The notes beneath the pieces were generated by a model. The model worked only from the letters and a program-made list of their open reading frames with translations, ran no database searches and was not told the DNA's origin. Below are positions 2,301-53,402 of a DNA stretch of 64,000 nt, piece after piece (the stretch's first letter is position 1; each line of letters begins with the position of its first letter). Both the position numbers and the translations under genes were made by a program. Source of the stretch: Geosiphon pyriformis uo1 (Eukaryota > Fungi > Glomeromycota); the NCBI GenBank assembly GCA_016748015.1, contig JAAOMT010000085.1, forward strand, positions 62,001-126,000. The letters run 5' to 3'.

Positions 2301-2544
2301 TAGCCAATTTAAAAACAAGAAAAAAACTTATTTATTTAATATATAAATAATTTTAAAGATTATAAATTAGTTATTATTAATTATAAAAAAATATATAATA
2401 TAAATATTATAATAAAAAATAAAATTAAGTTTAATAAAAATATAATTAAAAGATAATTACACAAACTTATTAAGAATAAATAAGTTTTTATTAAACATTT
2501 TAGCAAAATTAAATTATTAAATATTTTTGTTTTAAAAAATATAT

Positions 2545-2986: not shown

Positions 2987-3049
2987 TTAAGCTTAATTTT
3001 AAATCATTAGACTTTTTATAATAAAAATAATTAAAAACACTTATTTTAA

Positions 3050-6000: not shown

Positions 6001-7450
6001 ATTTTATAATAGCTGTATAATTAAACTTTTAAACAATTTACAACTAGAAAAACAGCAAAAAATTTGACAAAACAAAACTCCAGAAGTTTAAAAAACCGAC
6101 TAAAAAAAGCAACTTTAAGCACTGTTTTAGAACAGTATACCAACTCTATATACTGTTTTAATATTGTTTAGAAGTATTGTTAAAAAACAAAATAAACATA
6201 CTTATTTTTAATAAAATTAAAAGACTTATTAACAACAAATTCCAGAATTTACAAAAATAAATAATCTAAACAAATATACAAATCTTTATATTAAATATTG
6301 ATATTAAAAAAATACATATCAATTTTAATAAAGCTTAATCTTAAAAAAAAGATAATATTATCTGATAAAAATTAACAAAAATCAAAAATAATAATATTAC
6401 AATATATTAACCAATTATTAAATAACAGTATAAATAGCACAGATTAACAAATAAAATTAGAAAACATAATGTGTATATGATAATATGCAAATTGTGCACA
6501 AATGTATTTAATTTAATGTAATTATAAACAAATAAGCCAAGAGATACTTACAGTTAAATTAAAGACCTAATAGCTTTAACAATTATTTACTAATTAATTA
6601 TAATAAACATGAAAATATATAACTTAAAATATGTATATATTAATTATTAATATTTAGAATTTTAGAAAAAATAGTTTTTTAACTAGAAAAAATTAAAGAA
6701 TTAAAAAAAAATCAATTAGATAAAATAAATTATAATTTTAAAAAAAGCTAAAAAGTATGTTTTTTAAGCTTTGTATTATAATATTCACCAATATTAAAAT
6801 TAGTAAAATTAGAGAACTTTCTTTTTTATAATCTAGTCTTTTATAAATAATCCAAAAAACCACTACTTTTTTTTACTATTGTCTTTTTATTAATAAAAAA
6901 AATAATAGAAAAATCTAATACACTAATAAAATATGAATAAGATCCAAGTTTAATAAGATTAAAAATACATTAAAAAAATATTAACTACATGAAATTATCT
7001 AGAAACTACTTATAATAATATCTTGACCAAAATTAACAGTTAATTTAAAAATCCAGAATAAGCTCTTTATATCTTAAAAAAAATAATAATTTCTGATCAA
7101 AATTATTTTATAAATACTAATTTTGTTGAATTTTACTTTTTAATTATAATTTTTTTTGAATTTATTAGAAATAAGATACTACTTTACTATAAACAAAAAA
7201 ATACAAATATCTGATATTAGTGTAATATAAAAAAAATATATTTACAAGAGTTTTAAAAAAAGACACAATTAGAAATATAGAGATATAACAAGAATTTTTT
7301 TGAAGAATTAACATAATAATGGTTATTAATAGCAATTTTAATAAAAACATTACATAAAAACATTAAATCAAATAAAAAAAGCACTTATTAGAGGAAATTA
7401 TTTAATACTTGCTAAAAGTTAAAAAAAATTTACCAAGCTAACTTTTAAAT
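3050..7450 (+). mobile_element. Heavily decayed Ty3/Gypsy internal region (RT-RNaseH-integrase to ~5530, then an unassigned 3' region)
   Basis: YLDD reads 'tac ttg aat aat' (3590-3601); 'GLKLNPEKCFF' at ~3677-3710; YHPQTNGLVE reads YHLQTNKLVK from 4866; 'LEPIVII' at ~5510. Boundaries and the 5530-7450 assignment are approximate. Confidence 0.7.
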
Positions 7451-9160
7451 TCTTAAATAAAAAAAATAATAATAATTTATTACATAAAAATTTAGCATAA
7501 AAATTAAAATTAGCACTAATCAAGACTAATATATTTATTTTTATGTCAAAATTAGATAATTCTTTATATTATTTTTAATCTAAAAAGCCATAAAGATTAA
7601 TTATAGTATAACTACTAAAAAAATAATCTGTAATAATAAACACAATTTAAGAATTGTTTTTTTATCAAATTTTTTGTGCTAATAAATGAATTTAAGAATG
7701 CAAAAATTCTTGACAATTTGAACAAAATGTGAAATGTTTTGAAAAAAATAATAGTAAAATTAGCTAATAAAATGTTTTTTAAACATTGATTTAATAAATT
7801 TAACTGTTTAAAAAATAGACATTTATTAAAGGTTTTTAAGTTAAAATTGTTGATAACCAAGATTGTAAAAAAGTTAAGCTCAAATAAAATTTTTAGGCTT
7901 AATTATCTTATTAAAATATAGTTGATTTTTAATAACATTAAGACTTTTAAAGTTAATAATATAATTTATAATAGTGTAAAGTCACTAAATATTATCAAAC
8001 ATTTATTAATAATCAAAAAAAATTACTAGAGATCCAAGAATCAAAAGTAGTTGAGGATATTTTTATTAAAAAAACAATTAAAAAAAAAATAAAAAATTTT
8101 AGTTTTAACAAGAATAATATAATAAAAAGCATATTAGAATAATTGTTTTACAAGATAGTTTTAGATTACTTGATAATTGAAAAAAATTTAGTTTTAAAAC
8201 CAAATAAAATAAAACTTAGAATTGTTAAAATCATAAAAAAATAAACAAAAAAATAAAAAGTGCTTTTAGTGCTATTTAATCTGTAATTTTGTCAATATAT
8301 GTTTTTGAATTATATTAAAGATAATGCTTTTTTAAACATAATAGAAAAGATTAACATAAATGAATTGGTTTTGGTAATTGGTAGTCTGTTTAATAACAAA
8401 GTTGTTAGTTTGTTTAATATACTTAATAAACTATAAAAATATTGTAATAACCTAGTAATAAGATGTTTTTTGGTTTTATTAAATTCTTGTTTGGCTTTTA
8501 ATAATATTTTAGTTTTGTAAAAAGTATGAATTTTAATAATTTTTAAGTCTTATAAATAAGATAGTATTTTAACAAATACGTAATCTATTATACTTATTAA
8601 AATGGTTAAAAAATTTTGTTTAAAGTTTTTTCAAATTGTATTTACTTTACAAATAACAATTTTAATATTTTTTATGAAAACAACTTTATAGTATTAAAAA
8701 GTACTTTGACTCAGTCACTTATTTTTATTATTGGTTTAATAGTAAAAAATACTTTAAAAAAAACCAAAAACTTTGACTGGTTTTATAAAATATGCATAAA
8801 ACTTATAAATTAATTAAATAATATTACCTAAAAACTAGTTTAAAATAAATTAAAATGTGTGGGTTTTTGAATGATTACAAAGTACATAATAAGTTAAATC
8901 AAAATGAATTTTCTTGCCACTATTTTAAAAAATCTTTTATAATCTCTTGTTATATAAAATAAAAAGACATAAGCATTTGTGTAAATATAGAATTAATACA
9001 AACTTTGTAACAAAAACAGATAAAGTAAAAATTAATAAAAAAAGATTGTTCTTTTTTACAGTTAATGCTTTGTTAATAATACAATTTAGATAAAAAGTAG
9101 TTAAGCTTCAATACAATACATTTTGAAAATTGTTAATAAGTTTTTTAAGATCAATAATAT

Positions 9161-9875
9161 TGTTACAGATTGGAGTAACAAGCTAACAAATAGCAAGGGA
9201 GAACAGGATTGTAAGGTGATGGAAATAATCAAAGGAAATTCAACTTCAAAGAGCGAATTGAATAAGTATAGATTCAATATGTAAGATTAGTCTTATAAAA
9301 TATCTCAGTCACTATACTTTTCAAAGATAACTGGAGAATCTGAAGGTAAAGGAATAGTCTGTACTGTCAACAAATAATCATACTTGGTATAATTCTATGC
9401 CTCATATTGGCACTCTTAAAATTCAATATTAAGTATCAGATGTGTTCTTTAGTCATGTTTTATTTAATAATTTTCAAATGTTGTAATTACACGTTTCAGG
9501 AAAAGGGTAAGGAATAACCAACAAGTAATCTTTTATCTTTAAGATGTTCAGATACTTGAAAGTAGAGAAAGGGAAATTAGCAATAAGAGAAGGATTAAGA
9601 TGAAAGTTGTTATTTTATTTATTTGATTTCCTTGATTTTTTCATATTTTTCTACAGTTAAGAGATTCATTGCTTATATAGCTATTAAAAGTGGTCAATAA
9701 TCAGATCAACGACTAGATCAATAATCAGGTTAATGATTAGGTTAATGATCAGGTCAACAGTCAGATCATTAATCAGGTTAATAATCACTTACTAAAAATA
9801 GAATGGCTAATTTATATGACATCAGTGGCTAATACATATAATAATTAATAAAAAGTATAAGTTTCAACCATAACA
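9161..9875 (-). repeat. 3' LTR of the Gypsy element
   Basis: tgttac...ataaca; colinear without gaps with 16199-16913; directly preceded on the minus strand by a purine tract. Confidence 0.97.
9692..9787. repeat. 8 x 12-bp tandem repeat (consensus GGTCAATGATCA) in the LTR
   Basis: Units ggtcaataatca, gatcaacgacta, gatcaataatca, ggttaatgatta, ggttaatgatca, ggtcaacagtca, gatcattaatca, ggttaataatca; the same array is at 16730-16825. Confidence 0.9.
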
Positions 9876-9888
9876 TCATTCTCTCCAA
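9876..9888 (-). other. Polypurine tract (PPT)
   Basis: Minus strand reads ttggagagaatga immediately before the TG of the 3' LTR. Confidence 0.75.
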
Positions 9889-10500
9889 AGAGATTAAGTT
9901 TTGGCAAAATTAAGCTATTTATAGTGTAATTAATTAGAAGAGTTTTATCTAACTCAAAGCTAACTAGTTTGTTGAAGTTTTTTGTGAATAAGATATATAA
10001 CACTTAAGACAAAATGAGTTTTGTATTCAGGAGACCAAATATTTGTATTAGAGTTTTGGCTCTTTTAGCAATAATTAAAACTTTTGAAACATCTAACTGT
10101 ATAATGTCCAAAATTTCTGCCTGTATTCTGAAGTTGTTTTCTTCATGAGTTTCATATCTTTTATGATTTCACCAAGGCAACCATAGAGTTTTAATTGCCT
10201 TCCATATGACAAGTTTTTGTCTATGAGTAAGATTTCTTGAAGTGTTTTTCCAATTGTGTTGGAAGATAGGAGTATAGCTGCTGTTATACTTTTCAACAGA
10301 TATTTATCTATTTTACTATCAATTCTTTCTCTTCTGGTAGTAGTTTTCTTTGGTCTAATAACAGTATGTGTTCTACTGTTATCAGTTATAGTGGTTTGTT
10401 TTCCAATGGTCAGAGTAACATTTGGATAGTTTTTGATCCAATACTCATAAAAAGTATAAAAAGCATTTTGAATGTTTTGATCCAGAAAATAATTGTTCAT
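9876..10500 (-). pseudogene. Extra ORF of unknown function between integrase and the 3' LTR
   Basis: ATG-initiated 135-aa ORF (10093-10500); the same frame continues past two stops up to the PPT. Confidence 0.55.
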
Positions 10501-10592
10501 ATTAATTAAAGATATCTCTGTTTTGGGAATGGTGCATTTATTTATACTTAATTTTTGCTGATCATTTGAGTTGGTATTATCAAAACGGGCAG

Positions 10593-13500
10593 CTAATCAG
10601 GTTGTTTATGATATTTTTTGAGTTGTGTACCAGGATAATCATTGAAGATTGTTCCAAATTGATCTTGAAGAATATAAAAACTATTGTTCAAAACTTTGTT
10701 GACTATAAAAGGTCCTTTCCACTGGCTAGAGAATTTATCACCATAAATATTGTCTCTATCTAAATGGTATTCCAATACTAAGTCACCAACACTTAAAAAA
10801 AGTGTTTTATAGGTTTTTTTTTTCTTAAGCTTTTTTTGGAACTGTTTTTATCTTTTCAAAAGCAATTATTTGTGCTTCTACTAAGGAGTTAAGAATAGTA
10901 CCAAGTCTTCTTTGCAAAATGTCTTTGTAATTTCCTATTGTAATCTCTTCAAAGAGTATTGTTTTAATGTCAGTTTCTATTGGTAGTGTTACTATGCGTC
11001 CATAGAACAGATAAAAAGGTTCATAACTTGTTATGTCATGATTTACAGTTCTATAAGCAAACAAAGCTAAAGACAGTACTTTGTCCCATAAGTTTGTTTT
11101 TTTACTGGTTTTGGCTAGGGTTTTACATAATATTCTATTGAAATGTTCTACTAGGCCATTTGTTTGGGGGTGATAAGAGGAGGAAAGTTTATGATGTATT
11201 CTCATTTTTCTACAAAGTTCTTTAACTAGTGTATTGAGAAAAGCTCTTCTTCTATTAGATAAAGTTTTTTGGGGCAGCCATGACAGCAGATAATATCTTC
11301 ATAAATGAAATTGGCTATTGAGACTGCTGTTTGGTCTGGGGTGGCTCTTGCTTTTACCCACTTTGTAAGATAGTCAGTAGCTGTGATAATATATTTGTTG
11401 CCATCAGGAGTGATTATTAAAGATCCAACAACATCTATACCAATTCTGTCAAATGATTGACCAACAAAGATTGGATAGATATCTTCTTTGTGATTGGGTT
11501 TGCCTCTTCTTTGGCAAATGTTATAGGTTTTGATGTATTCAGCAATGTCTTTTTCCAAGGTAGGCCAATAATAGCAAGCTAAAGTTTTCTAAATTGTCTT
11601 TGTTTTTCCAAAGTGTCCAGCTAATGGGTCAGTGTATATGTTGTATATTACAATTTCTCTTTCTTTAAATCTGATGACTCTCTGGAGGCAGTCAGGATCT
11701 TTTTTGTTTCTTTTGTATAATTGGTTCTGGCAGATCAAATAAAAATTTGATTGTTTGCACAAATGTTCTCTTTACTGTCGAGTGTATTTAGGTGGGTATT
11801 GTCTTTTACCCAAAAATTCCATTAAGGCAGAGTAGTTGTCCAAGTCCATTATCATGTTTGTTTATAAAGAAGTTATTAATAATTAAGTTGGTTTGGTTTG
11901 AGAGGTTGTACTATCACTGGATGGTAAGTCTAGATAGAGTGTTGGTATTTTGATGATTTGCTTCTTTGTGGTGTTGAATATTATAGTCGAATTCATCCAA
12001 GTAGAGTATCCAGCAAATTATTTTTTTGTGTTCCAGCTTCTTTTTCTTGCATAGTCAAACCAAGGCTTGATGATCTGTTATCACTAAGAATTTTGCACCA
12101 AAAAAATATTAATCCCAGTAGTTGGTAGTCCAAACTACAGCTAGATATTCTTGTTTAATAACTGAATAATTCTTTTCTATTGGTGTGAGAGATCTACTGG
12201 CATATGCTATAGCATGTTTTCTGCCATTTTCATCTTTCTGTAAAAGAACAGCACCAAGTTCATAGCCAGATACATCAGTGTGAAGGATAAAAGGTTGGTT
12301 CAGATTAGGTTGTTTGAGAATTGGTTCAGTAACAAGTTTTTCCTTCAAAAATTCAAAAGCTTTTTGTTGATAAGTGCTCCAGTGATAATTGACATTTTTT
12401 TTGAGTAGTTGATTAAGAGAAAAGGCAATTTTGGAAAAATCCTTGATAAATTTGCAATAGTAAGAGACCAAACCAAGAAAAAAGCATAGTTTAAGAACAT
12501 TCATTGGTTGTTTAATGTTTTGAACTTTTTCAACTTTAGCTGAGTCAGAAAAGATTCCATCTTTTGTAACAAAATAACCAAGAAATTGGGTGGATTAGCA
12601 TCCAAAGAAAGATTTGATTGGATTGATCTTGAGGCCAGCATTTTTGAGCAGATTAAAAACCTTCTGTAAATATTCAAGATGTTCATCCCAGGTTTTTGAA
12701 TATACTATTATGTCGTCCAAATAAACCAGAACAAAGTTTTTTTTACTAATTCAAACACTTTATCCATTAGGTATTGAAAGGTAGGAGAAGCATTAGTAAG
12801 ACCAAAAAGCATGACTGTGAATTCATAGGTGCCATACTTGGTGATAAAGACAGTTTTTTTTCTGCTTTCTAGATCTATCTCTACTTGCCAGAATTCAGCA
12901 GTTAAATCAATGGTTGAGAAGAAAGCAGCACCATTGAATTTATCTAGCATTGCATTAATTTTGAGGAGTGGGTACATGTCTCTTATAATGATGGCATTTA
13001 ATTGGCAGTAGTCAACACAGAAGCATAGGGTTTCATCTTTCTTGAATACCACTACAACTGGGAAAGCCCATTTACTCATGGTTTTTTGTATAAATCCAAG
13101 ATCTTTCATCTGGTTTATTTCTTTCTTGATAAACTTATCATTATATCAATTGGATTGATATGGCTTCAAATAAATAGGGCAAGTTTTTTTGGTAGTGATG
13201 GTATGTTGTATCACATGGGTTTGTCCAGGAGTGTCACCTTCTTTTGAAATAACTGGACTATTTTTAGCCAACAGATTTTCAATTTCCACTTTTCTTTTTT
13301 CAGAGGAAGATTCTTTTTGTTCTACAATTATTGATTGGATTTCAGGTGGTTCATTCTCAAAAAACTTTTGTACTTCTTTAAGTTCTTTTCAAGATATCAA
13401 GCTAATTAATTCCCAATCTTTGTAATAGATCAGGCAAGATTTGCATTCATCACTTGGTAAATACAAAGATTTATTATACTAATACCATGCACAAGAACCA

Positions 13501-14603
13501 TGCCACCAATAACTGTATTTTGCTTTCTTGCCAGGTTTTCTGTTAAAGGTTTTTCTGAAGATATTGTAGTAGGGCCAGCAAATCAGCTTGCCATTTACTA
13601 TAATTCCTTCTTTGTCAGTTTTAATATTATCCAGTGGCTTTTCATTGCTGGTGAAAATAGTATAGGTGAGTTCAACAGTTTCTTCCTGTTTTTCTTGATC
13701 TTTATCATTGCTCTCATCATCATCTGATTCATCTGATTGTTCTTTTTTTTGGTTTTGCTTGGGTATTGGAGGGGTTGTCCAATAATGGCACTTAATCACA
13801 ATGGGTTTTTCACCATATCTAATAGTTAACTCACAAAGTTCATAGTTAAGTAGTGCTTTGGCTTTCTTAAGCCATTTATTACCAACAATGATGGTATACT
13901 CTTTTGCTTCAGATACTTCCATATCAGTTTTAATGCTGATATTATTGATGTGGACAAAAATAACTTTGGCTATGCCCAAGCCTTTCTTCTTATTATTATG
14001 TACGTTGGTCATTGGTCTTGTGGAAGGCTCATTAATCTTTCTGCTGATTGCTTCAAAAAAATGTTTGGCAATTACACTAACAGATGATCTACTGTCTAAG
14101 ATCAGATCAATGAAGTAACCAGCCACTTGGGCTTTACAAATCAGAGGAGTGACATTGTTGTTATCAGCAAGTCTAGCTTGGTGAGAGCGTTTGTTGGTCT
14201 TTGGTGTTTTTTTCTTTGGTATTAATGATTTGTGAAGATCTTTTCTGAACTGTGGATGAGTCATCAGTTGGCCAAATGTAATGTGTGCTGGGGTTTTCAT
14301 GAGATCTTTAACAACAGAATAGGGTCCAGATTTTTATACAATTTCTGAGAGTTCCAACTTTGGAAGATTTTTAAAAACCTTAGCCTTTGGTAGCTCATTG
14401 TTATCAGCAGATGATTTGGATGCTTTGTTTAGATCTATAACGAAATCAATCTTGGCTTTCTTCTTCTTTCTGGTTGATTCAAACATGTTGATTGCTAGTT
14501 TATTCATATTATGATCATCATCAGTTAGGTTAAAAATGTAAAAGAGGTTTTCTTCTGGTTGGCTTGCACTCTCACCCTTTGGAGATACACCTACCAATTT
14601 AAA
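10593..14603 (-). pseudogene. Gypsy pol (protease, RT, RNase H, integrase), disrupted
   Basis: PR 'LILDSRSSVS' (DSG>DSR); RT 'VYLDDII' at ~12706-12726; RH 'LHTDVSGYELGAVLLQ' and 'IAYASRSL'; IN 'HTDPLAGHFG', 'YHPQTNGLVEHFN'; C-terminal 'WKGPF'. Confidence 0.93.
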
Positions 14604-16145
14604 GGCTGATAAACAGTAGTTTCAATTAGGGGATTCTTTCCAAAGAAATTGATGTTGGCATAATTGGGTCTTTGATTAGAAACATTATTATTGTTGGGTC
14701 TGTTATTTTAGGTGTCATTATTTTTGGGAGCTGAAAGAGGCAATGAAAGATTGTTACAGTCTTTAGAAAAGTGTTTAGTTAGTCCACAATGATAGCACAC
14801 AGGTGGGCCACAATTTTGTTGTCTTTAATATAGTGGTTGTTGGGTTTAATTGAAGCAGGATTCAAATCTGGGTCTTTGGAATTGCTGATTGTCTCTGACT
14901 GCTTAGGCTAATAGTTTTAATAGCCAGGCAAGATTAGCTGTAAGTCTATCTATTAACTGTTCATTTGGGTCTTAAGTTTGGGCAGCAAAAGAGGTAGCAG
15001 CCATTTGGAGAGCAGAAGCCATAACAAAAGCAGGAGCAAAAACTGAAAGTGTAGATCCTAAGTGTATTCTTTGATTGTTTTCTATTCTCTAAGCAAATTC
15101 AATGGCCATATCTATTGTGAGATTATCTTTCAAGACCAGGAGAGGCCAAAAAGCATATAATAGATAAGTTCTCAATCTTTTTGTAAAGGAATGTATTTTC
15201 TGCTCTTCTGTTCAATTTCTTCCAGAGTCTATTTATTTAATGAGTTTTCTTATTGCTTTGGCATATTCTGTCACAACCTCATCAGGACCTTGAGTTTTTT
15301 TTTCTAATTCCATACGCCATTTTGAGATTAAGATGGAAGTTCTAAATTTTGTTTCAAACTGGGTAGTGAAAGAGGTGTTGTCTTTTTTAGCATTTGCTGG
15401 TGCCTATTTAATAATTTTTTGCTGAGCATTGGCATTGGTTTCTTGTAAGAACCAAGTAGCAGAAGAGCCTTGGAAGTAGCCACCAACAATTTGGAACTTG
15501 TATTTATTATCATATTGGTTTGCTGTGGCAGCTCTTTTAAAATCATCCAACTATTCAATTGGATCTTGGGCATTACCTCTGAATAATGATAATGGAGTGT
15601 TGTTTCTTTGCCCTAAAGCAGTCTGTATACCTTGGAAAACAATCAGAATGTTTTGTTGCAGAGGGTCTTGAACCATTGGTTCAGGTGTAACTGTTTGTGT
15701 GAAGTGTTTTGATTCACTTGAAAAGATATCAAAAAACAAGAGTAGTTTGATAGCTTTCTTTTTCTGTTTCAAGAGAAGTTTCTGTTGATTGATGGGCAGC
15801 AATCCAAATGTGGATTTGATGATTCAGATATTCGAGATTAGGGGGCTGTTGTTTAAAGATTGTAAAATATAAAAGCTGATTGATACTGTTGTTTCTTTCT
15901 TTAAAGTTGTCTTCAAAATAAGCTTGGTTAAAGTAATAGGTTGTATAAGCTATGTAGGTTTCAGCTGAATGCTCATTTAGGAACCAGTTCCAAAAGTCTT
16001 GGAATTGTCTGCTGGATTGTTCTTCAATGGAGAAGCAAATCAAGCAGGAGGGCAAAGGATTAAGTTCAATAAAGTCTAGATCATTTTTGTTGTGTGCTTT
16101 AAAATATTCTTTTGATTGTTGTGACAGGTATGAATAATCACCCAT
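14591..16145 (-). pseudogene. Gypsy gag, disrupted
   Basis: 'FRGNAQDPIE*LDDFKRAATAN' and 'QGPDEVVTEY' are gag-like; CCHC knuckle CYHCGLTKHFSKDC at ~14756-14797; one frameshift in a T-run at ~15735. Confidence 0.85.
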
Positions 16146-16175
16146 ACAAATAGAAAACAAAGTGGATTTTGACAA

Positions 16176-16192
16176 CTTCACAAGAAGCACCA
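16176..16192 (-). other. Primer-binding site (tRNA 3'-end complement)
   Basis: Minus strand TGGTGCTTCTTGTGAAG starts 6 nt inside the 5' LTR end. Confidence 0.75.
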
Positions 16193-16198
16193 CTTTTA

Positions 16199-16913
16199 TG
16201 TTATGGGTTGGAGTAACAAGCTAATGGATAGCAAGGGAGAACAGGATTGTAGAGTGATGAGAATAATCAAAGGAAATTCAACTTCAAAGAGTGAATTGAA
16301 TAAGTATGGATTTAATGTGTGAGATCAGTTTCATAAAATATCTCAGTTGCTATACTTTTCAAAGATAACTGGGAAATCTGAAGATAGAAAAATAATCCAT
16401 ACTGTCAACAAATGATCACACTTGGTATAATTCTATGCTTCATGTTGGTGCTCTTAGAATTCAATATCAAGTATCAGATGTGCTCTTCAGTTACATTTTA
16501 TTCAATAATCTTCAAATGTTGCAATTACATGTTTTAGGAAAAAGGTAAAGAATAACCAACAAGTAATCTTTTATCTTTAAGATGTTCAGATACTTAAAAG
16601 TAGGGAAAGGGAAATTAGCAATAAGAAAAGAATTGAGATGAAAGTTGTTATTTTATTTATTTGATTTCCTTGATTTTTTCATACTTTTCTACAGTTAAGA
16701 GATTCATTACTTATATAGCTATCAAAAGTGGTCAATGATCAGGTCAACGACTAGATTAATGATCAGGTTAATGATTAGGTCAATAATCAGGTCAACAGTC
16801 AGGTCATTGATCAGGTCAATAATTACTTACTAAAAATAGAGTGGCTAATTTATATGACATCAATGGCTAATACATGTGATAATTAATAAGAAGTATAAGT
16901 TTCAACTGTAACA
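16199..16913 (-). repeat. 5' LTR of the Gypsy element
   Basis: tgttat...gtaaca, 715 bp, about 90% identical to 9161-9875 by manual alignment. Confidence 0.97.
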
Positions 16914-17306
16914 ATATTTCTATTAACAATAACAAAATAATAGCTATTTTATTAATTAAAAAGTTGTTAATACTTCTTTGTATATTAATAATTAGCCAAT
17001 TTTTATTGTCAAATATTATAAATCTTATAGATATTTGGAAATTTTTTTGTTTACAAATGACATATCTAAGCTAAGTTTTATTAAAGCTCATTTAAATATT
17101 AAGTTTTTTTCAAATTTGGTTTTCAAAAAAACTTTGTTGAACAAATAGTTCTTTTATTTAGTTTTAACAGTTTTATTATTTATTATAAATTATCAAATAT
17201 AGTTTAATATTGTGTTTAAGAGTATATATCAAAAATAAAATATTATAATAAAAAAGAGACTCAAATTTAAAGCCAATTTGCCAAAAGACTTTCTTAATAA
17301 AGCTTT

Positions 17307-32899: not shown

Positions 32900-32989
32900 G
32901 CAAAACTAGAAATTAGTGTATGCGTTTTTGATAGCTGAGAAAGCCGCGACAATGAAATGAAGGAGTAAAATGACGACTTTAAAAAAGTT

Positions 32990-34095: not shown

Positions 34096-37000
34096 CTACA
34101 CATCTATAACTACCCACACACTGCCATCCAGACCAGAAAAGAAACAATAAGGCTTCTGACGACCAAAGCTAATAGCAAAGAAATTGGCCAAACCAAGCAA
34201 TCTCACAACACCGTCAGACAAAACCGAAGACACACCACAAGGGAGCCCAGAAACAACACCAACGTCACAAACCAGACCAGCCTTCTCCATCACCATCTGG
34301 TGGCTGGCTCTAGCCAACCATACTTTAGCACAATGTAATCCAACAACGAACCTGACATAATCAACAATTCGAGCAGTGGCCACCTTTCTATCCTCAAAAA
34401 CATCACAAGCCTCCTCATACCACTCCTCTAGCACAAACTCTTTGTACACCAAAGTGTACAGCCCAACATCAATGGAACATTGAGACAAAACCTGCAACAC
34501 AGCAGAAGCAGGAGAACCACCAGCCAGAGCTAACCAACAGGCAGAAGCCTCCGCCAAAATCTCACCATAAATGCCAGACTCATGAACACAAGTAAAAATA
34601 TGGTCAAAGAATTCCACCTCATTGCAAAACAAACACAACACACTAGGGTAGCACTTATCATACAACCTCTTCCTTACCACCACTGGCAACCTCTTGTGCA
34701 CAGCCTTCATAACATAAGTGCAAAGCATTGAGGATGCACGGCTAGTGAACCCAGCAAGCATATGAAAATCAGGATGCCACACCTTCGCCGTGACAACCCA
34801 GTCTATGCAACCAATCATCACATCTGGAACTACATTACAACCAGGCCCAGCTTCCCAACAAGCATAACAAATTGATCGAAAATTATTCCTGACAAAATGA
34901 CAGGCATTACCAGAAACAGCAATACCCTCAGCAACCAAAAAATGTTCACACACATTGGCACAAAAAAAAAAGGAGACCCAAAGGCAGCCCCAGCAGCTAA
35001 GTCAGCTCTCACATTACCAGGAATCCCAGAGTGTCCTTTCACCTTAACCCAACTCACGCTGAGATCCTTATCCCTGACCAAATTGAAAATATGACACCTT
35101 TCCAGCCAGCATTGATTACGGAAATCAGGGGCAACCAAAAACATCTCAGACACACATGCGTCAATGGCAGTCTGGCTGTCAAGATGTAACACCACAGTAC
35201 TTGAAGAAGGAACACACTCCAAAGCCAAAGCAACAGCCTGTAACTCGGCCATAGTAGATGACAAAAGACCACGAACAGTGACACCAATGCTCTTATCCAA
35301 GACCAGAAAGTATGCAGCAGCACCACAGGTGACCTCAGCAGAGCCTGCATTCCTCAAAGACCCATCCGTGAAAACTTCAAAAAAGCCTGACCAAATGTCA
35401 TGCAATCCATCTTTAACTGCAGAAAATTCCCCAGACCCCAAAATGTCCAAACCAAGCTTTTTCGCAGAGCCAACAGAACCAGAAAATAAGTAACCCTGAC
35501 CTTTCAAAAACTCAGAAGAAACCATAAACCAGTGAGGCACAGGGCCACGCGGATCCAACCTTTTCCAACGACAAAAAGTTTTCCAATCCAACAAAACATC
35601 TTTTTTATCAAAAAGCCGATCACCAAAAGTGACACCAAAACGTTTAAGAGATTTGACCGAATCAAAATACAGAGACTTTCCAAGAACAGAGGACAACGGG
35701 AACCAACCAGGACAATGAAATGCAGTGGGGAGGTTGTTCACCAAAGTAAACTCATTGCCCAGAAAGATTTTTACCATCCCAGCCAAAAAATTGTTCACCG
35801 GACTAACACGCAACCTGACTGGAAACTGCAAAGGATCCAAAGGAGCCCAACCAAGAACCTGTAGGTCCAAAAACCTATGTCTAAACAAACGCCCAAGAAT
35901 GCCAAAGGCATTAGAGAACGCCATCAAAGCAGCAATCTTCCCTTCTAACTGCACCTGCTCAAAAGGCTTTAGGCCATACAATGAGGGATGATGCAAAGCA
36001 GCATCAGAAAAATCACGGGAGAGACAAGCCTTAAACCTAAGACCCTTTCTAACTAAGGCATCCCACTTGTGACAAACATTAGACGAGACAAAACTGAACT
36101 GAGTACGATAGCTAACAATAGACTGCAAAACAGCTGACACCAGATAGGAGAATTGTTTGTCTGTAATAGCCTTCCTAAGCACAACATTGACGAAGAAACG
36201 TACATCCGCATGAGCCTTGGCAACACTCGGCTTGGAGAGCTCTTCAGTTGACAAAAAAATACCCAGATACCGATGTGCTTTCCCTTTCTTGGCAATAGAA
36301 ATTGGCTAACCACAAATGTTCAGCGAAGCAACTTTAATGCCCTGATTGATGGGAATAGCTACCGTCTTCTCACTATTGATAGAAATATCATTGATCACAA
36401 AAAATTCACTGGCAATGTTCAGAGCATATTGAGTAGAAGCCTGACAATTTCCAATCCAGATCGTATCATTGACAAATGCACCAGCCAAAAAATATGATGT
36501 CAAACTACCACTGCCCTCAATCCTGCCAGATTTTGAAACAAACTTAGTATCAATCTGGTACCCACACAATTGTTCGTGCCTTTTAATCTCACACAAAAGC
36601 GGATCGTAAAAAATTTTTCAAAGAAGTGGCGAAAAGACCTCACCCTGGTCTAGCCCATCATGCACCTTATAACCACCAGACAAACCAAAGTCAGTCATTA
36701 CCCTATTAACTCTATCCTCATAAATACCACCAAAAAACCTTATGAACCTCTCACACATCTTGACACACCACAAACTAGCTCTTAAATGATGCCACCCAAC
36801 TGAATCGTAAGCTTTCTGCATATCTTGCAAGACCAACCATAACTTCCTATCCTTCTCAATGGCATCCTCAATTACCGAACCGACAGCAAACACCAGAGAT
36901 TGTGTTGACGTACCCTTCAGCACCGAAAAGTTGTCACCCTGAAGAACATTGAACTTGCTACAAGCCATTGAAATATGGTCAGACAGAATCTTGAAAAGAA

Positions 37001-38780
37001 TCTTCCTGGCAGTCTCAATCAAAACAATAGGCCGAGTGTTCATAAGAACTCCATCCCAGTCATAAGGCTTAGGAATCATTGACACCCAAGCCTTCTTCCA
37101 CAAAACAGGCACCATACCATCAGACAAACATTTATTAAACAGCACCAACAGGCACCCCAAAACCACTTCACCACCATGTTTCCATAACTTATTAGGAACA
37201 CCAGACAAATCAGCAGCCTTGCCATTAGGAAAACCACCAACAACAGAAAGTAACTCACCCATACTGATTGCACTCATAACACCTGAAAAAGCATTATTCC
37301 GAACATAGTCCAAAGGCGTGTACTGACAAGCCCAAAGACCAGAAAGCACTGACTGCACGGAGCATTTTCTCGTCCACCCCTCCATTATTCTATCCACACT
37401 GGACTTCACCTCTTCAGGCAACAAAACCAGATCATCATCAACTATCAAGTGATCCAACACAACCTTACGAAAAGGCTTTTCCAACACACTCCTGATCATA
37501 CTACTCTTATCCGAACAGAAATTATCCATGCACTTCTCAATCACCTTCCTAACCAAAGCTTCCTCAGCCAATCTTGACTCAAACATCTTTGACCTCCTGT
37601 AATCTCTACGAACCAATGACAAATGTCTAACAACAACATCAGATTTAACACCCGAGCCAACCAAGTCCTTGAAAGCACGAGCCTTCGCATCATCCAGAGT
37701 CGACCATTTACTCACAAGACAGTCAGCACCCAGCAAGTCACCAGAGCAAAATTTCTTGACAATCTTGGCCACCAACAATTCCAGACCAAAAAACCTAGAA
37801 GAATGTTTGTTTCTCGAACACTTGAATTCACTAAACCAATGCCTCGAAAATGTCACATCAGCAGAATCCACCACAGCTCCCACCAAAACTGCCCACATAG
37901 CATCCACATCACCACATATTTCGGCATCAGAGAACACCTCACCCAAAGACAAAAGTTTAGCTGATGAGAGATCCTTAAACTTAGCCCATCCAACACAGTC
38001 AGCATTCTTGATTTTGAACTTCCAACGATTTTTATTCGCCTGCTTGCGCAAACTGTTCAATTGTATATCTAGAAGCCCACCCAAACCAACTGAAACTACA
38101 ACAGCCTTGTTATCGGTGTCAAAGAAATCTGAAACAGAGACAACTTGATGGCCAGCAACAGCAGTAGACAAATTACTACCAACAAAAATGTAATCAAGTG
38201 TTTTCCCAACCCCTCTCGAATTGCTCCATGTATAAGAATTAGCCAAATGATGACCAACAAATAAATTGACCAAACCTAAACTCAAACAAAACTTGAAACT
38301 AGCACTTTTATCAGATCCATTCTCATTAAGGTCCCCACCCAAGATAACAAAATTGCTGGAGTTGACCACCTTTGCAATGAGGGTGTTAACTTCAGAAGCC
38401 TGACCAAATCTAGCCCCAGAGGAGGCACCAGCATACAACTCTAAAACAGTAACTGAGAGCTTGCTCTTAAAAAGAAGCCGAACAGAAATAATCCGACCAG
38501 GAATCTCCTCCATCTTAGATACATAACGGGCCAAAGAAGTGTTCATAACAATTGCAACCCCAGCCCTCATGAAACCCTTATCCAAGCCAGAAAAAAATAT
38601 TCGCACTCCATCAAATTTATCCTTTATCCACGGCCCAGAAGAGGATCTCAACTTAGTCTCAGTGACAAAAAAAACCATATTTCCCGAGCTCACATGCCAA
38701 CGAACAACATCCGCTTATTTCGCAGGAACATTGATACCCCGAACATTGCATGTAGCAAATTTCCAAACCAAACTACTCAT
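34096..38780 (-). pseudogene. LINE B ORF2 (APE-RT-RNaseH-CCHC, ~1560 codons)
   Basis: 'FATCNVRGIN', 'ETKL', 'GGDLNE', 'LQDMQKAYDSV', 'AFVNDT', 'VFTDGSL', 'WVKVKGHSGIPGNVRAD', 'CLFCNEVEFFDHIFTC'; stops at ~38715, 36618 and 36306; frameshift in an A/T run at ~34970. Confidence 0.95.
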
Positions 38781-40732
38781 TGAGATGGAGGAGAAGCCAA
38801 CGAACCCGATCCAGAACACAGATGATCCAATCTATCCAAGACCGAGTGAACTGAAGCCTCAAGAGCCATCATATTCGACTTCAAACCACCAATCTTGGCA
38901 GTCAAAACCTTAGAACTGCTCGGACTGAAATCAACAACCGACCCACCAACATTGGGAGAAGAAGAGGCAGACGACAACAACGTGCTATCCAAATTCAAAT
39001 CTGAGTCTATATCTGAAACAACGGCAGTTGGAGACACCAAAAGAAAAGCCGAGGGAGAAGGCGCCAATGGCATCAAGTCAACGAAACTTAATTTCTTCAA
39101 AATGAGTGAGACTTGGTCTGCGAGAATTTCCATGGAGCGTTCCAGCACAGCTAAGCAACCACTTAAATCAGCGACACCAGATGAGGAGGAATCCATTGAG
39201 AAAGCCTTCGAACCAGAGACCAAACTGACACCAGGAGCACTCGAAGAGACAACACAAAAGGGAAAACGGCCTGCCACTTGGGCCCACGTCTTTCCACCAA
39301 AAAAAACTGGACGAGCAACAGGGACCAACTTTCTCTTATATATCCCAGCTAGACAAACCCGATCTTGCTCAGAAACCACCCTCCTTCCTCGAACACCAGA
39401 ATACTCACCCAAGGAACAGTTGACCGAAACATGACTGAATTGTTTACAACGAACACAACTGGCCAAAGAAAGACCAGCCCAACGCAAACTCACATTTCTG
39501 AAAACTGGAATGGTATCAATAGCAGCCAACTTGGATGTCTCATCACCAAAACAAATTACAGCACATCTATTACAAACATATAAACTAGGGTTACAGCCGA
39601 TATAACAAGTCTTCCCACCATATGATTCCAACAAACTGGAGAAATCATGAGCATTGGTGCCAACTGGAAGAGTATAGAGCAAAGCCTGATGCTGATCACT
39701 CGATACCCATGTTTGTTTATCAATATTTGCCTTTGCCACGCGGACAGAATCTTTTCCCATGAGCACAGACCATCTAGCTGTGACCAAATCAGCCATCTTA
39801 GATGATTCATATTCTACCAGGGCCTTTTGCCAAAGACCAATAAGCTGTACTTTAATTGAAACAATCTTGCCAAACTTGGAGAACACTGCCTCAATTGCCA
39901 ATTTGAGAAGATCTACTGGGATTTCCTTGACGATCACCTCCTGATCTAAATGGCTGTTTACTTTTCTTAGATCATCATTTACCAATATTTTTTCACAGAT
40001 TGCCATTTCCCTTGCCTTAAACAAACTTTTTTCAGATGTAAATGATGACCTTATTATTCCAGGAAATTTTGAGGGAGTCGAAGCCCCCCCAAAACCATCA
40101 ACCTGATAAAAAATTTTTTTCACACAAACTAACTTATCCTTAATAGTTTTGCCAGGAATGGCAGATAGCTCAATATTCAATGCAAACAATTTTGATGAAA
40201 TAAAACTCCGTTTCTCCAGAGCACATGACCTGACTGGAGGAAGGCAATTGGATCCACAAAACTTAGGACTCGGAAGAGGCAGAGTGTCTTCACCAACACT
40301 TAGCACGTCGAAAGAAAGAGATGGTGGCTTACTGTTCAGAACATAGGTGTGAGTACGTGTCTTCCTTGGCGTGGCATTATTCATGTCATCATCCAAACTT
40401 GAAACATCCAACTTTGCATAGCTAGTTTCCTCAGCAACAATGTTTTCTAAGTTATCCAAGTCCGAGACATCACTTACGCTGTCCACTTCACTGTTGACCT
40501 CGCTAGCCCATGATCGCCCAATATTAGGTCCGTCACCACTTTTATCCATAATGTTTAAGACACCAGCAGATGACCCCACCAAACCGTCAACTGCCACAGA
40601 TTTCTTCGGCTTCTTATAGGACGCACCGCGAGATTGAGGACCAACCGAACGCTTATTTTTGACACCAGACTGGGTCCCCAACCCAGTCGAAACAGACCCA
40701 GAACCACCAGCAGCAAAGCCCACCGGTTCCAT
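38777..40732 (-). CDS. LINE B ORF1 protein (open frame, ~651 aa from ATG)
   Basis: Uninterrupted ORF; RRM-like 'VIVKEIPVD...FSKFGKIVSIKVQLIGLWQKALVEY'; knuckle CVRCKQFSHVSVNC. Confidence 0.85.
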   Translation of the reverse strand: MEPVGFAAGGSGSVSTGLGTQSGVKNKRSVGPQSRGASYKKPKKSVAVDGLVGSSAGVLNIMDKSGDGPNIGRSWASEVNSEVDSVSDVSDLDNLENIVAEETSYAKLDVSSLDDDMNNATPRKTRTHTYVLNSKPPSLSFDVLSVGEDTLPLPSPKFCGSNCLPPVRSCALEKRSFISSKLFALNIELSAIPGKTIKDKLVCVKKIFYQVDGFGGASTPSKFPGIIRSSFTSEKSLFKAREMAICEKILVNDDLRKVNSHLDQEVIVKEIPVDLLKLAIEAVFSKFGKIVSIKVQLIGLWQKALVEYESSKMADLVTARWSVLMGKDSVRVAKANIDKQTWVSSDQHQALLYTLPVGTNAHDFSSLLESYGGKTCYIGCNPSLYVCNRCAVICFGDETSKLAAIDTIPVFRNVSLRWAGLSLASCVRCKQFSHVSVNCSLGEYSGVRGRRVVSEQDRVCLAGIYKRKLVPVARPVFFGGKTWAQVAGRFPFCVVSSSAPGVSLVSGSKAFSMDSSSSGVADLSGCLAVLERSMEILADQVSLILKKLSFVDLMPLAPSPSAFLLVSPTAVVSDIDSDLNLDSTLLSSASSSPNVGGSVVDFSPSSSKVLTAKIGGLKSNMMALEASVHSVLDRLDHLCSGSGSLASPPSQ

Positions 40733-41359
40733 AGCCACAAAAAGGGGAATGTCTGAAGAAATAACTGGAGAAAGGTGAAGGAGAAAGAGAAAAGGAAGGC
40801 TATTTTAGTGACGACTCAAAGCTCTCATTGTAACCAGGAGATCAACGAAAGAAAGAGTTAAGTTTTCTTTTTAATAATATTTAAAAAACTATTATTAATT
40901 ATTAAAGATTTTTTTAAATAAATATTTTTTATTTTAATATTTAATATTATTTAATTTTTTTATAATTTTATTAATTTAAAAATAGTTTTTAAAAACAATA
41001 TTAAACTTTTTATATAAAAATTATATATTAAATTAAAATTTTTTATGATTTTTGTTTTTGCTTTGTTTATTATTTTTTATATTATTTTTTGAATATTTTT
41101 AATATTAAATTAAAATTTGTTAATTTATAATAATATATTATTATATATTTTAAATTTACTTAAGTTTTTAATATTGTTTTTGTTTGTTAATTAATTTTAA
41201 TAAAAAATAATATTTAAATTCTTTTTTTGTTTAATTAAAAAAAATTATTATATTTTATACTATGTTTAAGACCAAATTAATTAATTTTTTTAATTATGGT
41301 ATTTTTAAAATTTAAAATTTGGTTTTTTAAATTAATATTAAATTTGTTTAAAATTTAAA

Positions 41360-49130: not shown

Positions 49131-49139
49131 TCTGAAAAT

Positions 49140-52624: not shown

Positions 52625-53187
52625 ATTATTGACCTAATCATTAATCTGGTTATTAATTACTTTTAATAACTATATAAGTGATGAGTTTCTTAACTATAGA
52701 AAAACATATAGTAATTGATCAAGAATAAATAAAATAACAACTATTATCTCAATTTTTCTCCTATTAGTTATTCTTTTTTCCTTATCTTCAAGTATCTAAA
52801 CATCTTGAAATAAAAAATTACTTGTTGGCATTTATCTACCCTTTTTTTGAATTATATAATTGTAGTATTTGAAGATTATTCAATAAAATATGACTAAAAA
52901 GCACATATAATATCTAATATTAAATTTTAAAAACACTAACATAAGACATAAAATTATATTAGTGTGTTATTATTTGTTGACAGTACAGATTATCCTTTTA
53001 TCTTCAAATTTTTTGGTTATTCTTTAAAAAAAATAACAATTAAAATATTTTATAAAACTGATCTCACATATTAAATTCATACTTATTTAATTTGTTTCTT
53101 AAAGTTGAATTTCTTTTGATTTATTCTATTATTATACAATCCTGTTTTCTCTTACTATCTATTAGCTTATTATTCCAACTTATAACA
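52625..53187 (+). repeat. Partial or solo LTR of the 9161-16913 Gypsy family, opposite orientation, more decayed
   Basis: Reverse complement of the 53187 end (tgttataagttggaataataagctaatagatagtaagagaaaacaggattgta) matches the LTR start; colinear back to the 12-bp repeat; no PBS follows. Confidence 0.85.
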
Positions 53188-53402
53188 ATTTTATTAATTT
53201 ATTTTAACTAAAATTTTATTATTAATATTTGAAAAAAATATGTACAAATTATGTAATCTAAAACAAATACCAAATTTCTCTGTAATTTTAAGCAGTTTTA
53301 TAATATTACTAGAAAATTAAGATAACAAGTTATAAATAATAGAAAACAAAAAGTTATTATAAGATATTAAACTATATTTTACTGTAATATTTTTGTATTT
53401 TA

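What the first reader, a model, noticed from the sequence alone, without database searches (positions are those of the whole stretch)
9161..16913. Transition-only, largely non-CpG hypermutation of repeats: a RIP-like genome defence with an unusual TpC bias
Seen: the two LTRs, identical at insertion, align without a gap. By my manual count they differ at ~74 of 715 positions, all C/T or G/A, with 0 transversions and 0 indels. Only ~16 are at demonstrable CpG. Of the ~58 others the 5' neighbour of the mutated C is T ~33, A ~12, C ~10, G ~3, and ~22 are TCA/TGA; by 3' neighbour, CpA ~29, CpT ~16, CpC ~13. Established: ordinary 5mCpG decay affects CpG, Neurospora-type RIP favours CpA in Pezizomycotina, and TpC preference is typical of APOBEC3-like deaminases. 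Inference: a repeat-targeted C>T mutator acting on both strands with a CpG + TpC spectrum, in what appears to be a non-ascomycete (Glomeromycota-like) fungus, where I know of no established RIP. Counts are by eye and not normalised to background.
Basis: partly seen in the sequence, partly recalled or inferred. Interest (0 to 1): 0.9.

Follow-up and report, generated by a model that had tools for sequence, protein, structure and literature searches.

The report
Transposon-targeted C-to-T hypermutation in Geosiphon
In the glomeromycete fungus Geosiphon pyriformis, integrated transposon copies accumulate almost only C-to-T changes, fastest at CpG but in every context, while ordinary genes do not; current fungal surveys confine this kind of repeat-directed mutation to ascomycetes.

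Summary
The two 715-bp LTRs (9161-9875, 16199-16913) align without gaps and differ at 74 sites, all transitions.

It is a genome property, not a fluke:
- Eleven sister-LTR pairs of this family give 746 transitions to 26 transversions.
- An unrelated LINE family gives 275 to 16.
- Comparison with other copies shows the direction is C>T/G>A.

After normalising for composition, the "TpC bias" shrinks to a mild 5'-pyrimidine preference of about 1.5-fold. The dominant context is CpG: 79% of CpG sites differ between sister LTRs, against 26% of non-CpG sites. Even so, non-CpG C>T runs about 90 times faster than transversions.

The process is transposon-specific:
- CpG observed/expected is 0.07 in the LTR elements and 0.40 in the LINEs, but 0.90 in host-gene loci.
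- A 1.1-kb host-gene duplicate at the same roughly 90% identity has Ts/Tv of only 2.3.

The organism is Geosiphon pyriformis (Glomeromycota). It has a canonical DNMT1, extra DNMT1-like paralogs, an orphan bacterial-like DNMT and UNG. No APOBEC-type gene was found.

My best reading is methylation-linked deamination aimed at transposons. It is neither homology-triggered Neurospora-type RIP nor APOBEC-like editing.

At least nine other unchecked first-reader notes flag the same pattern elsewhere in this genome.

The parts
9157..9160 (.). Target-site duplication ATAT, left copy
   Evidence: It matches 16914-16917. The same 4-bp ATAT or GTAC-type duplication flanks the other sister-LTR pairs whose outer flanks were held.
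9161..9875 (-). LTR (the 3' LTR in the element's own, minus-strand orientation), 715 bp, TG..CA
   Evidence: It differs from its sister at 74 of 715 sites, all transitions. CpG observed/expected is 0.22.
9876..9890 (-). Polypurine tract on the minus strand, abutting the 3' LTR
   Evidence: Read directly: the + strand here is pyrimidine-rich, so the complement is purine-rich. Inference.
10825..11205 (-). Integrase remnant (rve_3)
   Evidence: E = 1.5e-4. The ORF is short, and the coding region is broken into ORFs of 273 aa or less.
12109..12504 (-). RNase H domain (RT_RNaseH_2)
   Evidence: E = 4.7e-31.
12708..13109 (-). Reverse transcriptase remnant (RVT_1)
   Evidence: E = 2.8e-11.
13479..14300 (-). 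Aspartic protease (RVP_2). The order PR-RT-RH-INT marks a Ty3/Gypsy-type element.
   Evidence: E = 4.5e-4. The order follows from the coordinates.
16181..16192 (-). Candidate primer-binding site. The minus strand reads TGGTGC..., complementary to a tRNA 3' end ...GCACCA. It lies 6 nt from the 5' LTR.
   Evidence: Read directly. Inference.
16199..16913 (-). Sister LTR (the 5' LTR in the element's orientation), 715 bp
   Evidence: CpG observed/expected is 0.07.
16914..16917 (.). Target-site duplication ATAT, right copy
52625..53198 (-). Third, partial LTR copy of the same family
   Evidence: 76% identical to both LTRs, with 110-115 transitions against 16-19 transversions.
34096..40738 (-). LINE (endonuclease, RT and RNase H ORFs), an unrelated family showing the same mutation spectrum
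   Evidence: In 13 copies of 2 kb the singletons are C>T/G>A 241, T>C/A>G 34 and transversions 16. CpG observed/expected is 0.45.

Best explanation
After integration, transposon DNA in Geosiphon pyriformis undergoes cytosine-to-thymine hypermutation on both strands of the duplex, one site at a time. CpG is the hottest context. About 65% of CpG cytosines per LTR copy have already changed, and once one strand of a CpG has mutated the other strand loses its hypermutability. All non-CpG contexts are also hit, at about 15% per copy, with a mild preference for a 5' pyrimidine and a 3' C. Host genes, their introns and a host-gene duplicate are spared.

The most likely mechanism is cytosine-5 methylation aimed at transposon chromatin, followed by deamination of the methylated cytosines. 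The canonical DNMT1 would maintain CpG methylation. One or more of the extra DNMTs (the DNMT1-like paralogs without an RFD domain, or the orphan bacterial-like DNMT) would methylate non-CpG cytosines. Deamination could be spontaneous or assisted by the methyltransferase, and it accumulates gradually.

Shown here: the spectrum, its direction, its restriction to transposons, its dependence on an intact CpG, and the gene inventory. Inferred: that methylation is the targeting signal, and which enzyme acts at non-CpG sites.
For: Scale and direction:
- Eleven sister-LTR pairs give 746 transitions to 26 transversions with few indels. Matching 4-bp target-site duplications confirm they are true sisters.
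- The G/C state is the majority in other copies at 637 of 769 transition differences. At the 80% level the count is 264 against 17.
- An independent LINE family gives 241 C>T/G>A, 34 reverse transitions and 16 transversions.
- Mutations are spread evenly along the 7.7-kb element.

Context:
- CpG sites differ at 137 of 173 (0.79); non-CpG at 601 of 2345 (0.26).
- No extended motif is seen from -4 to +4, and CHG is not favoured.
- Where both bases of a CpG differ, the two changes lie in different copies 54 times and in the same copy once.
- Per-site rates are equal on the two strands, and the strand split per copy shows no overdispersion.
- There is no excess of CC>TT tandem changes.

Transposon specificity:
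- CpG observed/expected is 0.07 (LTR elements) and 0.40 (LINEs), against 0.90 in 30 kb of host-gene loci and 0.95 in the DNAJC7 introns, whose GC is 33%.
- The host DNMT-gene duplicate C657a/b, 1145 bp at about 90% identity, has 50 transitions, 22 transversions and 47 gap columns. Against the LTR pairs this gives Fisher p = 6e-13.

Machinery:
- A canonical DNMT1 with RFD, two BAH domains and the catalytic domain lies on C371.
- Further PF00145 loci lie on C702, C666 and C657.
- The 540-aa orphan DNMT keeps its PCQ and ENV motifs.
- UNG and a TDG/MUG-type glycosylase are present, so loss of uracil repair does not explain the pattern.

Literature: transposons of the glomeromycete Rhizophagus irregularis are heavily CG-methylated (PMC8647823).
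Against: - No methylation data exist for this genome, and non-CpG methylation has not been shown in any glomeromycete. The R. irregularis study measured CG only.
- The excess of C>T over transversions is about 630-fold at CpG and about 90-fold at non-CpG. This is larger than classical spontaneous 5mC decay gives in animals or plants, and it hints at an enzymatic step.
- There is a marginal excess of same-strand neighbouring mutations (412 against 392 +/- 10, p = 0.03; 473 against 451 +/- 13, p = 0.05).
- The unique-DNA control rests on one gene duplicate, nine gene loci and one gene's introns.
- Only two transposon families were measured here.
Confidence: 0.6

Rival explanations
1. A true RIP-type system: an enzyme recognises duplicated DNA as such and deaminates cytosines in bursts, for example before meiosis. 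It would use one of the DNMT1-superfamily paralogs in the way RID or DIM-2 is used in Neurospora.
For: - The changes are C>T only, confined to repeats and on both strands.
- The C>T to transversion ratio is very high.
- All 11 LTR pairs sit in a narrow 7-13% divergence band.
- RFD-less DNMT1-superfamily paralogs exist.
- There is a marginal same-strand clustering.
- Target-site-duplication bases just outside the element also carry transitions.
Against: - A linked 1.1-kb gene duplicate at about 90% identity is not affected.
- A kinase family with at least 640 candidate loci keeps open frames.
- The context is CpG >> CpC > CpA > CpT, not CpA.
- The composite RIP index of the element is -0.6.
- The LINE family carries a roughly five-fold lighter load with a similar C>T to transversion ratio. 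That fits steady accumulation better than bursts.
- No paralog could be assigned to RID.
Confidence: 0.17
2. A single-strand DNA cytidine deaminase (AID/APOBEC-like or another deaminase family) edits transposon DNA, as the first reader suggested from the TpC counts.
For: - A mild 5'-pyrimidine preference survives normalisation (T 0.31 and C 0.28 against A 0.18 and G 0.21; p = 4e-8).
- There is a marginal same-strand adjacency excess.
- Searches for unusual deaminase families were not conclusive: the controls for PF14441 and PF18778 rang nowhere.
Against: - The preference is only about 1.5-fold, and the dominant context is CpG, which needs an intact CpG.
- The two strands are hit equally per site, and the strand split per copy shows no overdispersion.
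- There is no APOBEC_N match.
- Only five ordinary CDA-fold loci were found, with no expansion.
Confidence: 0.07
3. There is no targeting. The whole genome has an extreme C>T mutation bias, and transposons simply show it because they arrive GC-rich and then decay neutrally.
For: - The genome is AT-rich (window GC 31%).
- Tracts of 16-20% GC with CpG observed/expected of 0.05 exist.
- No between-isolate SNP spectrum could be obtained.
Against: - The host-gene duplicate has Ts/Tv of 2.3 at the same divergence.
- CpG observed/expected is 0.9 in gene loci and introns.
- Intron GC is 33%, far above the roughly 1-10% equilibrium that the transposon spectrum implies. This figure is derived.
- UNG is present.
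Confidence: 0.05
4. The changes arose before or during integration, through reverse-transcriptase errors, RNA editing or cDNA editing.
For: None specific. It is considered because retroelement hypermutation by cDNA editing is well known.
Against: - Sister LTRs are copied from the same template and are identical at integration, yet they differ at 10% of sites, on both strands and in both copies.
- The polarised direction is G>A/C>T, not the A>G expected of ADAR-type editing.
Confidence: 0.01

Closest known systems
Repeat-induced point mutation (RIP) of Neurospora crassa and other Pezizomycotina (RID- and DIM-2-dependent)
   Same: C:G>T:A transitions only, on both strands, confined to repeated mobile DNA. 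Very high load (10% apparent divergence), stop-riddled coding regions and AT-enrichment of relics.
   Different: - The context is CpG >> CpC > CpA > CpT instead of CpA.
- Standard RIP indices are negative (CRI -0.6).
- A duplicated host gene and large gene families are spared.
- No RID ortholog could be assigned.
[quoted passage not shown]
Dim2-dependent, methylation-associated C>T mutation of repeats during vegetative growth in Zymoseptoria tritici (Moller et al. 2021, listed in the references of PMC12210899; content recalled from my own knowledge)
   Same: Methyltransferase-dependent elevation of C>T specifically in transposons, without needing meiosis. This is the nearest mechanistic analogue for a fungus with little or no known sex.
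   Different: As I recall, that system favours CpA contexts and depends on a bona fide DIM-2. Here CpG dominates and the responsible enzyme is unknown.
5-methyl-CpG decay of methylated transposons (vertebrates, plants, DNMT1/DNMT5 basidiomycetes), including the TpCpG-biased hypermutation of Microbotryum (Hood et al. 2005, cited in PMC11105155; context recalled from my own knowledge)
   Same: - CpG>TpG/CpA with CpG depletion confined to transposons.
- A canonical DNMT1 is present.
- Dependence on an intact CpG (54:1).
   Different: - Four fifths of the events here (601 of 738) are at non-CpG cytosines, running about 90 times faster than transversions.
- At CpG there is no 5'-T requirement: ACG 0.77, CCG 0.82, GCG 0.78, TCG 0.81.
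AID/APOBEC editing of retroelements
   Same: C>T/G>A only, with a slight 5'-pyrimidine preference.
   Different: - It is post-integration and equal on both strands.
- There are no strong strand-coordinated clusters.
- The preference is about 1.5-fold rather than many-fold.
- CpG is dominant.
- No APOBEC-type gene was detected.

Membership tests
RIP (Neurospora type) | Mutations are C:G>T:A transitions confined to repeated DNA | tested here: met
RIP (Neurospora type) | CpA (to TpA) dinucleotide preference and positive RIP indices | tested here: not met
   Fractions mutated: CpG 0.79, CpC 0.36, CpA 0.27, CpT 0.20. TpA/ApT is 0.83, (CpA+TpG)/(ApC+GpT) is 1.44 and the composite index is -0.6.
RIP (Neurospora type) | Triggered by duplication as such, so any duplicate of several hundred bp, genes included, is mutated | tested here: not met
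   The host DNMT-gene duplicate (1145 bp, about 90% identity, 32 kb apart) has Ts 50 and Tv 22, and the two loci have CpG observed/expected of 0.87-0.92. At least 640 kinase-domain candidate loci mostly keep open frames. Only one duplicate was measured at the DNA level.
RIP (Neurospora type) | A RID/Masc1-clade methyltransferase is present | tested here: inconclusive
   PF00145 loci on C702, C666 and C657 lack an RFD domain. By sequence they sit with DNMT1/MET1-type or bacterial DNMTs. No phylogeny with RID references could be built.
RIP (Neurospora type) | Acts in the premeiotic dikaryon | not testable with these tools
   Needs crosses or life-stage sampling.
5mC-deamination decay of methylated transposons | CpG hypermutability with CpG depletion restricted to transposons | tested here: met
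   79% of CpG sites differ between sisters. CpG observed/expected is 0.07 and 0.40 in transposons against 0.90-0.95 in genes and introns.
5mC-deamination decay of methylated transposons | Hypermutability needs the intact CpG dinucleotide | tested here: met
   When both bases of a CpG differ, the changes lie in different copies 54 times and in the same copy once.
5mC-deamination decay of methylated transposons | A maintenance methyltransferase (DNMT1 with RFD and BAH domains) is present | tested here: met
   On C371: RFD at 420027, BAH at 420765 and 421329, catalytic domain at 423510.
5mC-deamination decay of methylated transposons | Cytosines outside the methylated context mutate at near-background rate | tested here: not met
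   26% of non-CpG sites differ between sisters in all 12 contexts (range 0.13-0.50). This is about 90 times the per-site transversion rate (derived). It would be met only if transposons are also methylated at CpH.
5mC-deamination decay of methylated transposons | The elements are actually methylated | not testable with these tools
   No methylation-aware data were reachable. The runs found were contigs only.
AID/APOBEC-type editing | Strong, fixed 5'-neighbour preference | tested here: not met
   5' T 0.31, C 0.28, G 0.21, A 0.18 at non-CpG sites.
AID/APOBEC-type editing | Strand-coordinated clusters or single-strand bias | tested here: inconclusive
   The per-copy strand split is not overdispersed (chi-square 18.7, 22 df). 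The same-strand adjacency excess is only about 5% (p = 0.03 and 0.05).
AID/APOBEC-type editing | A deaminase gene of that family is present | tested here: inconclusive
   No PF08210 match. The PF18778 and PF14441 searches found nothing, but their controls rang nowhere. Five ordinary PF00383 loci were found.
Ty3/Gypsy LTR retrotransposon (the element itself) | TG..CA LTRs, target-site duplication, PBS and PPT, and domain order PR-RT-RH-INT | tested here: met
   The PBS and PPT were read from the sequence.

The most novel reading that the evidence does not exclude
Glomeromycota possess a dedicated genome defence that mutates transposons by converting cytosines to thymines in every sequence context. 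It would be enzyme-driven, would not use RID, and would work in vegetative, possibly asexual nuclei. Targeting would be by transposon chromatin or small RNAs rather than by homology. The executor would be a lineage-specific methyltransferase: the orphan bacterial-like DNMT shared with Ambispora and Acaulospora, or an RFD-less DNMT1 paralog. This would be an independent invention of RIP-like mutagenesis outside Dikarya.
Probability: 0.25. Interest if true: 0.85.

Novelty: new variant of a known kind. Interest (0 to 1): 0.66.

Why it matters
[quoted passage not shown] Those screens rely on CpA/TpA-type indices or AT-rich k-mers, which are blind to the spectrum found here (composite index -0.6).
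- Sister-LTR comparison shows a strong transposon-specific C>T mutator in a glomeromycete. This bears on how long-lived, largely clonal symbionts restrain transposons.
- There is a practical consequence. LTR divergence and Kimura "repeat landscapes" in this genome overstate age about nine-fold: 10% apparent divergence against about 1.1% inferred from transversions. The "ancient LTR burst, no recent activity" picture for Geosiphonaceae (PMC11952901) may therefore be partly an artefact.
- It also makes a testable prediction: substantial non-CpG methylation, or a DNMT-like deaminase, in Glomeromycota.

Tried and rejected
- Unique-DNA SNP control by laying public runs on 28001-34000. The only other-sample run was a transcript assembly differing at one base, so it gave no spectrum. 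It did show that the DNAJC7-like gene is spliced and expressed.
I fetched partner LTRs only.
- A kinase-paralog DNA control failed for the same reason.
- The look-up of encoding contigs does not serve the window's own genome, so other LTR families could not be sampled.
- A fifth full-length copy (C608) was dropped from the singleton analysis. It is only 77% identical and added subfamily differences.
- Extended sequence motif (bacterial-type recognition site) around mutated cytosines: none.
- UV-like CC>TT tandems: none in excess.
- Loss of UNG as an explanation: rejected, since UNG exons are present on C609.
- APOBEC_N: no match. The OTT_1508 and NAD1 searches are uninformative because their controls rang nowhere.
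- Old repeats within the window at 64-70% identity give Ts/Tv of about 1.1-2.5, but they compare diverged lineages, not post-insertion change.
Polarisation and context were scored column by column only.
The exons were searched one by one.

Full report
**Observation**

The two direct repeats at 9161-9875 and 16199-16913 are the LTRs of one element. Each is 715 bp, runs TG..CA and aligns to the other without a gap. A 4-bp target-site duplication ATAT flanks the pair.

- They differ at 74 positions (A/G 28, G/A 17, T/C 15, C/T 14), with no transversion and no indel.
- The internal region encodes protease, RT, RNase H and integrase remnants on the minus strand. It is therefore a degenerate Ty3/Gypsy-type retrotransposon, with no ORF longer than 273 aa.

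**Is it a one-off?**

The LTR has more than 2,500 first-look matches in the 128-Mb assembly. I paired ten further elements from fetched loci.

- Where both outer flanks were held, the 4-bp duplications match (ATAT, GTAC or TTAG; two pairs differ only by transitions). They are therefore true sister LTRs.
- The 11 pairs together show 746 transitions, 26 transversions and few indels. That is Ts/Tv of about 29.
- Using the other 36 LTR copies as outgroups, column by column, the G/C state is the majority at 637 of 769 transition differences. The A/T state is the majority at 125. At the 80% level the counts are 264 against 17. The direction is therefore C>T/G>A.
- An unrelated LINE family behaves the same way. 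In 13 copies of the 2-kb stretch 35000-37000 (92-95% identical, no indels), singletons are C>T/G>A 241, T>C/A>G 34 and transversions 16. A further 205 of 215 multi-copy polymorphic columns are C/T or A/G.
- Four full-length copies of the LTR element show the mutations spread evenly along all 7.7 kb.

**Context after normalisation**

Counted per available site over the 11 pairs:

| Context | Sites differing | Fraction |
|---|---|---|
| CpG | 137 of 173 | 0.79 |
| non-CpG | 601 of 2345 | 0.26 |

| Non-CpG neighbour | Fraction differing |
|---|---|
| 5' T | 0.31 |
| 5' C | 0.28 |
| 5' G | 0.21 |
| 5' A | 0.18 |
| 3' C | 0.36 |
| 3' A | 0.27 |
| 3' T | 0.20 |

- At CpG the 5' base does not matter (0.77-0.82).
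- Nothing beyond positions -2 to +2 matters, and CHG is not favoured.
- The raw TpC and TCA excess is mostly composition, since TCA is the commonest C-centred trinucleotide. What remains is a 5'-pyrimidine preference of about 1.5-fold.
- Correcting for double hits (f = 2p/(1+p)), about 65% of CpG cytosines and about 15% of other cytosines have changed per LTR copy. Transversions stand at 0.17% per site per copy.
- C>T is therefore about 630 times (CpG) and about 90 times (non-CpG) the transversion rate. These figures are derived by hand.

**Mode of action**

- Per available site the two strands are hit equally, and the strand split of individual copies is not overdispersed (chi-square 18.7, 22 df).
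- Neighbouring mutations lie on the same strand only slightly more often than a copy-flipping null predicts (412 against 392 +/- 10, p = 0.03; 473 against 451 +/- 13, p = 0.05).
- Tandem CC>TT changes are not in excess (19 against 25).
- Where both bases of a CpG differ between sisters, the two changes lie in different copies 54 times and in the same copy once. After one strand of a CpG has mutated, its partner cytosine loses its hypermutability.
- The process therefore works site by site on integrated duplex DNA. It is not cDNA editing, RNA editing or reverse-transcriptase error, because sister LTRs are identical at integration.

**Is it specific to transposons?**

| Sequence | CpG observed/expected |
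|---|---|
| LTR elements | 0.07 |
| LINE copies | 0.40 |
| Nine host-gene loci (30 kb) | 0.90 |
| DNAJC7-like gene, exons | 0.94 |
| DNAJC7-like gene, introns (GC 33%) | 0.95 |

- The transposon spectrum implies an equilibrium GC of roughly 1-10% (derived). It therefore cannot be the genome-wide spectrum.
- The best control is a host-gene duplicate. Two copies of a DNMT gene lie 32 kb apart on contig C657 and align over 1145 bp at about 90% identity, the same divergence as the LTR pairs. They show 50 transitions, 22 transversions and 47 gap columns. Against the LTR pairs, Fisher p = 6e-13.
- That duplicate also argues against a mechanism triggered by homology alone. So does a kinase family with at least 640 candidate loci, mostly with open frames.
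- The control is a single duplicate.

**Organism and machinery**

- LINE ORF2 matches only proteins named Geosiphon pyriformis, on contigs whose lengths equal those of this assembly. The organism is thus a glomeromycete, not an ascomycete.
- PF00145 matches ten places, at seven or so loci:
  - A canonical DNMT1 on C371 with RFD, two BAH domains and the catalytic domain.
  - Two DNMT1-superfamily paralogs without an RFD domain, on C702 (with a weak BAH domain) and C666.
  - Two DNMT2-like genes.
  - The 540-aa stand-alone DNMT KAG9301204.1 on C657, together with its degenerate duplicate. Its only close relatives are in Ambispora and Acaulospora, followed by bacterial and phage enzymes.
- I could not decide whether any paralog belongs to the RID or DIM-2 clades.
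- UNG and a TDG/MUG-type glycosylase are present.
- There is no APOBEC_N match, and there are five ordinary CDA-fold loci. The searches for OTT_1508 and NAD1 are uninformative.

**Interpretation**

The combination points to cytosine methylation of transposon chromatin followed by deamination. The relevant features are transposon restriction, CpG dominance, the need for an intact CpG, a DNMT1 in the genome, and heavy CG methylation of transposons in the related Rhizophagus irregularis (PMC8647823).

The non-CpG component makes up four fifths of all events. It needs either non-CpG methylation by one of the extra DNMTs or an enzyme-assisted deamination. The size of the C>T excess keeps the second option open.

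The lighter load of the LINE family, at a similar C>T to transversion ratio, fits steady accumulation better than a single burst.

I rank the explanations as follows:

| Explanation | Confidence |
|---|---|
| Methylation-linked, transposon-targeted deamination | 0.6 |
| Homology-triggered RIP proper | 0.17 |
| Single-strand DNA deaminase | 0.07 |
| Genome-wide mutation bias | 0.05 |
| Pre-integration change | 0.01 |

**Comparison with what is known**

[quoted passage not shown] - It says a kingdom-wide k-mer screen found RIP-like signatures only in ascomycetes (PMC12543289).
- The transposon survey of arbuscular mycorrhizal fungi that includes Geosiphon does not mention mutation spectra (PMC11952901).
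- Standard indices call this element non-RIP (composite index -0.6). That explains how the signal could be missed.
- It is a new variant of a known kind. It resembles RIP in outcome and methylated-CpG decay in its hot context, but it fits neither definition.

**Earlier notes from the scan**

At least nine other first-reader notes on other pieces of this genome describe transition-only sister LTRs. They are unchecked and are not independent proof, but they agree with the family-wide and LINE results obtained here.

**Limits**

- Only two transposon families were measured.
- There is one host duplicate as a control.
- There are no methylation data.
- There is no between-isolate spectrum.

Noticed in passing
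L031/L033 (G000:C657:786780-790872) and L035 (G000:C657:819213-822836): A 540-aa stand-alone cytosine-5 DNA methyltransferase (KAG9301204.1) has introns and intact PCQ and ENV motifs. Its only close relatives are in Ambispora leptoticha (56%) and Acaulospora colombiana (44%), followed by bacterial and phage DNMTs. It is probably an old bacterial acquisition in Glomeromycota. A second copy 32 kb away, in inverted orientation, shows no PCQ motif in its open frames and looks like a pseudogene.
   Followed up: partly
window 9157-9160 / 16914-16917 and the flanks of 9 other elements: This Gypsy family inserts at a 4-bp palindromic target. Its duplications are ATAT in at least five of the eleven elements examined, GTAC-type in three, and TTAG once. 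In two elements the two copies of the duplication differ only by G/A or C/T. The hypermutation therefore reaches at least the first bases outside the element.
   Followed up: partly
window 29079-32962, minus strand: The DNAJC7-like TPR/J-domain gene is expressed and spliced. A transcript contig of run X2 defines seven exons with GT..AG introns of 88-338 bp, and run X3, from a second sample, shares five of them. One junction (31857/32151) carries 14 extra bases and non-canonical ends in X2.
   Followed up: partly
window 34096-40738, minus strand: A LINE with long open frames (653, 691, 474 and 285 aa) has endonuclease, RT and RNase H domains. At least 40 genomic copies are 92-95% identical over 2 kb without indels. 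This is a young, star-like family whose differences are almost all C>T.
   Followed up: yes
window 2001-8000 and 48000-52600: These tracts have 16-20% GC, CpG observed/expected of 0.05 and a composite RIP index near 0. They look like the end product of the same decay, meaning old transposon relics no longer recognisable as repeats.
   Followed up: no
genome-wide: The PK_Tyr_Ser-Thr kinase domain has at least 640 first-look candidate loci, and most of the 144 that were scored have open frames. Such a large intact gene family would be hard to keep under a homology-triggered RIP.
   Followed up: no
window 43904-47912 vs 59972-63986: Two copies of a 4-kb segment lie 16.07 kb apart at 69% identity (860 transitions, 337 transversions). 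They may be an older duplicated or tandem element. Not analysed further.
   Followed up: no
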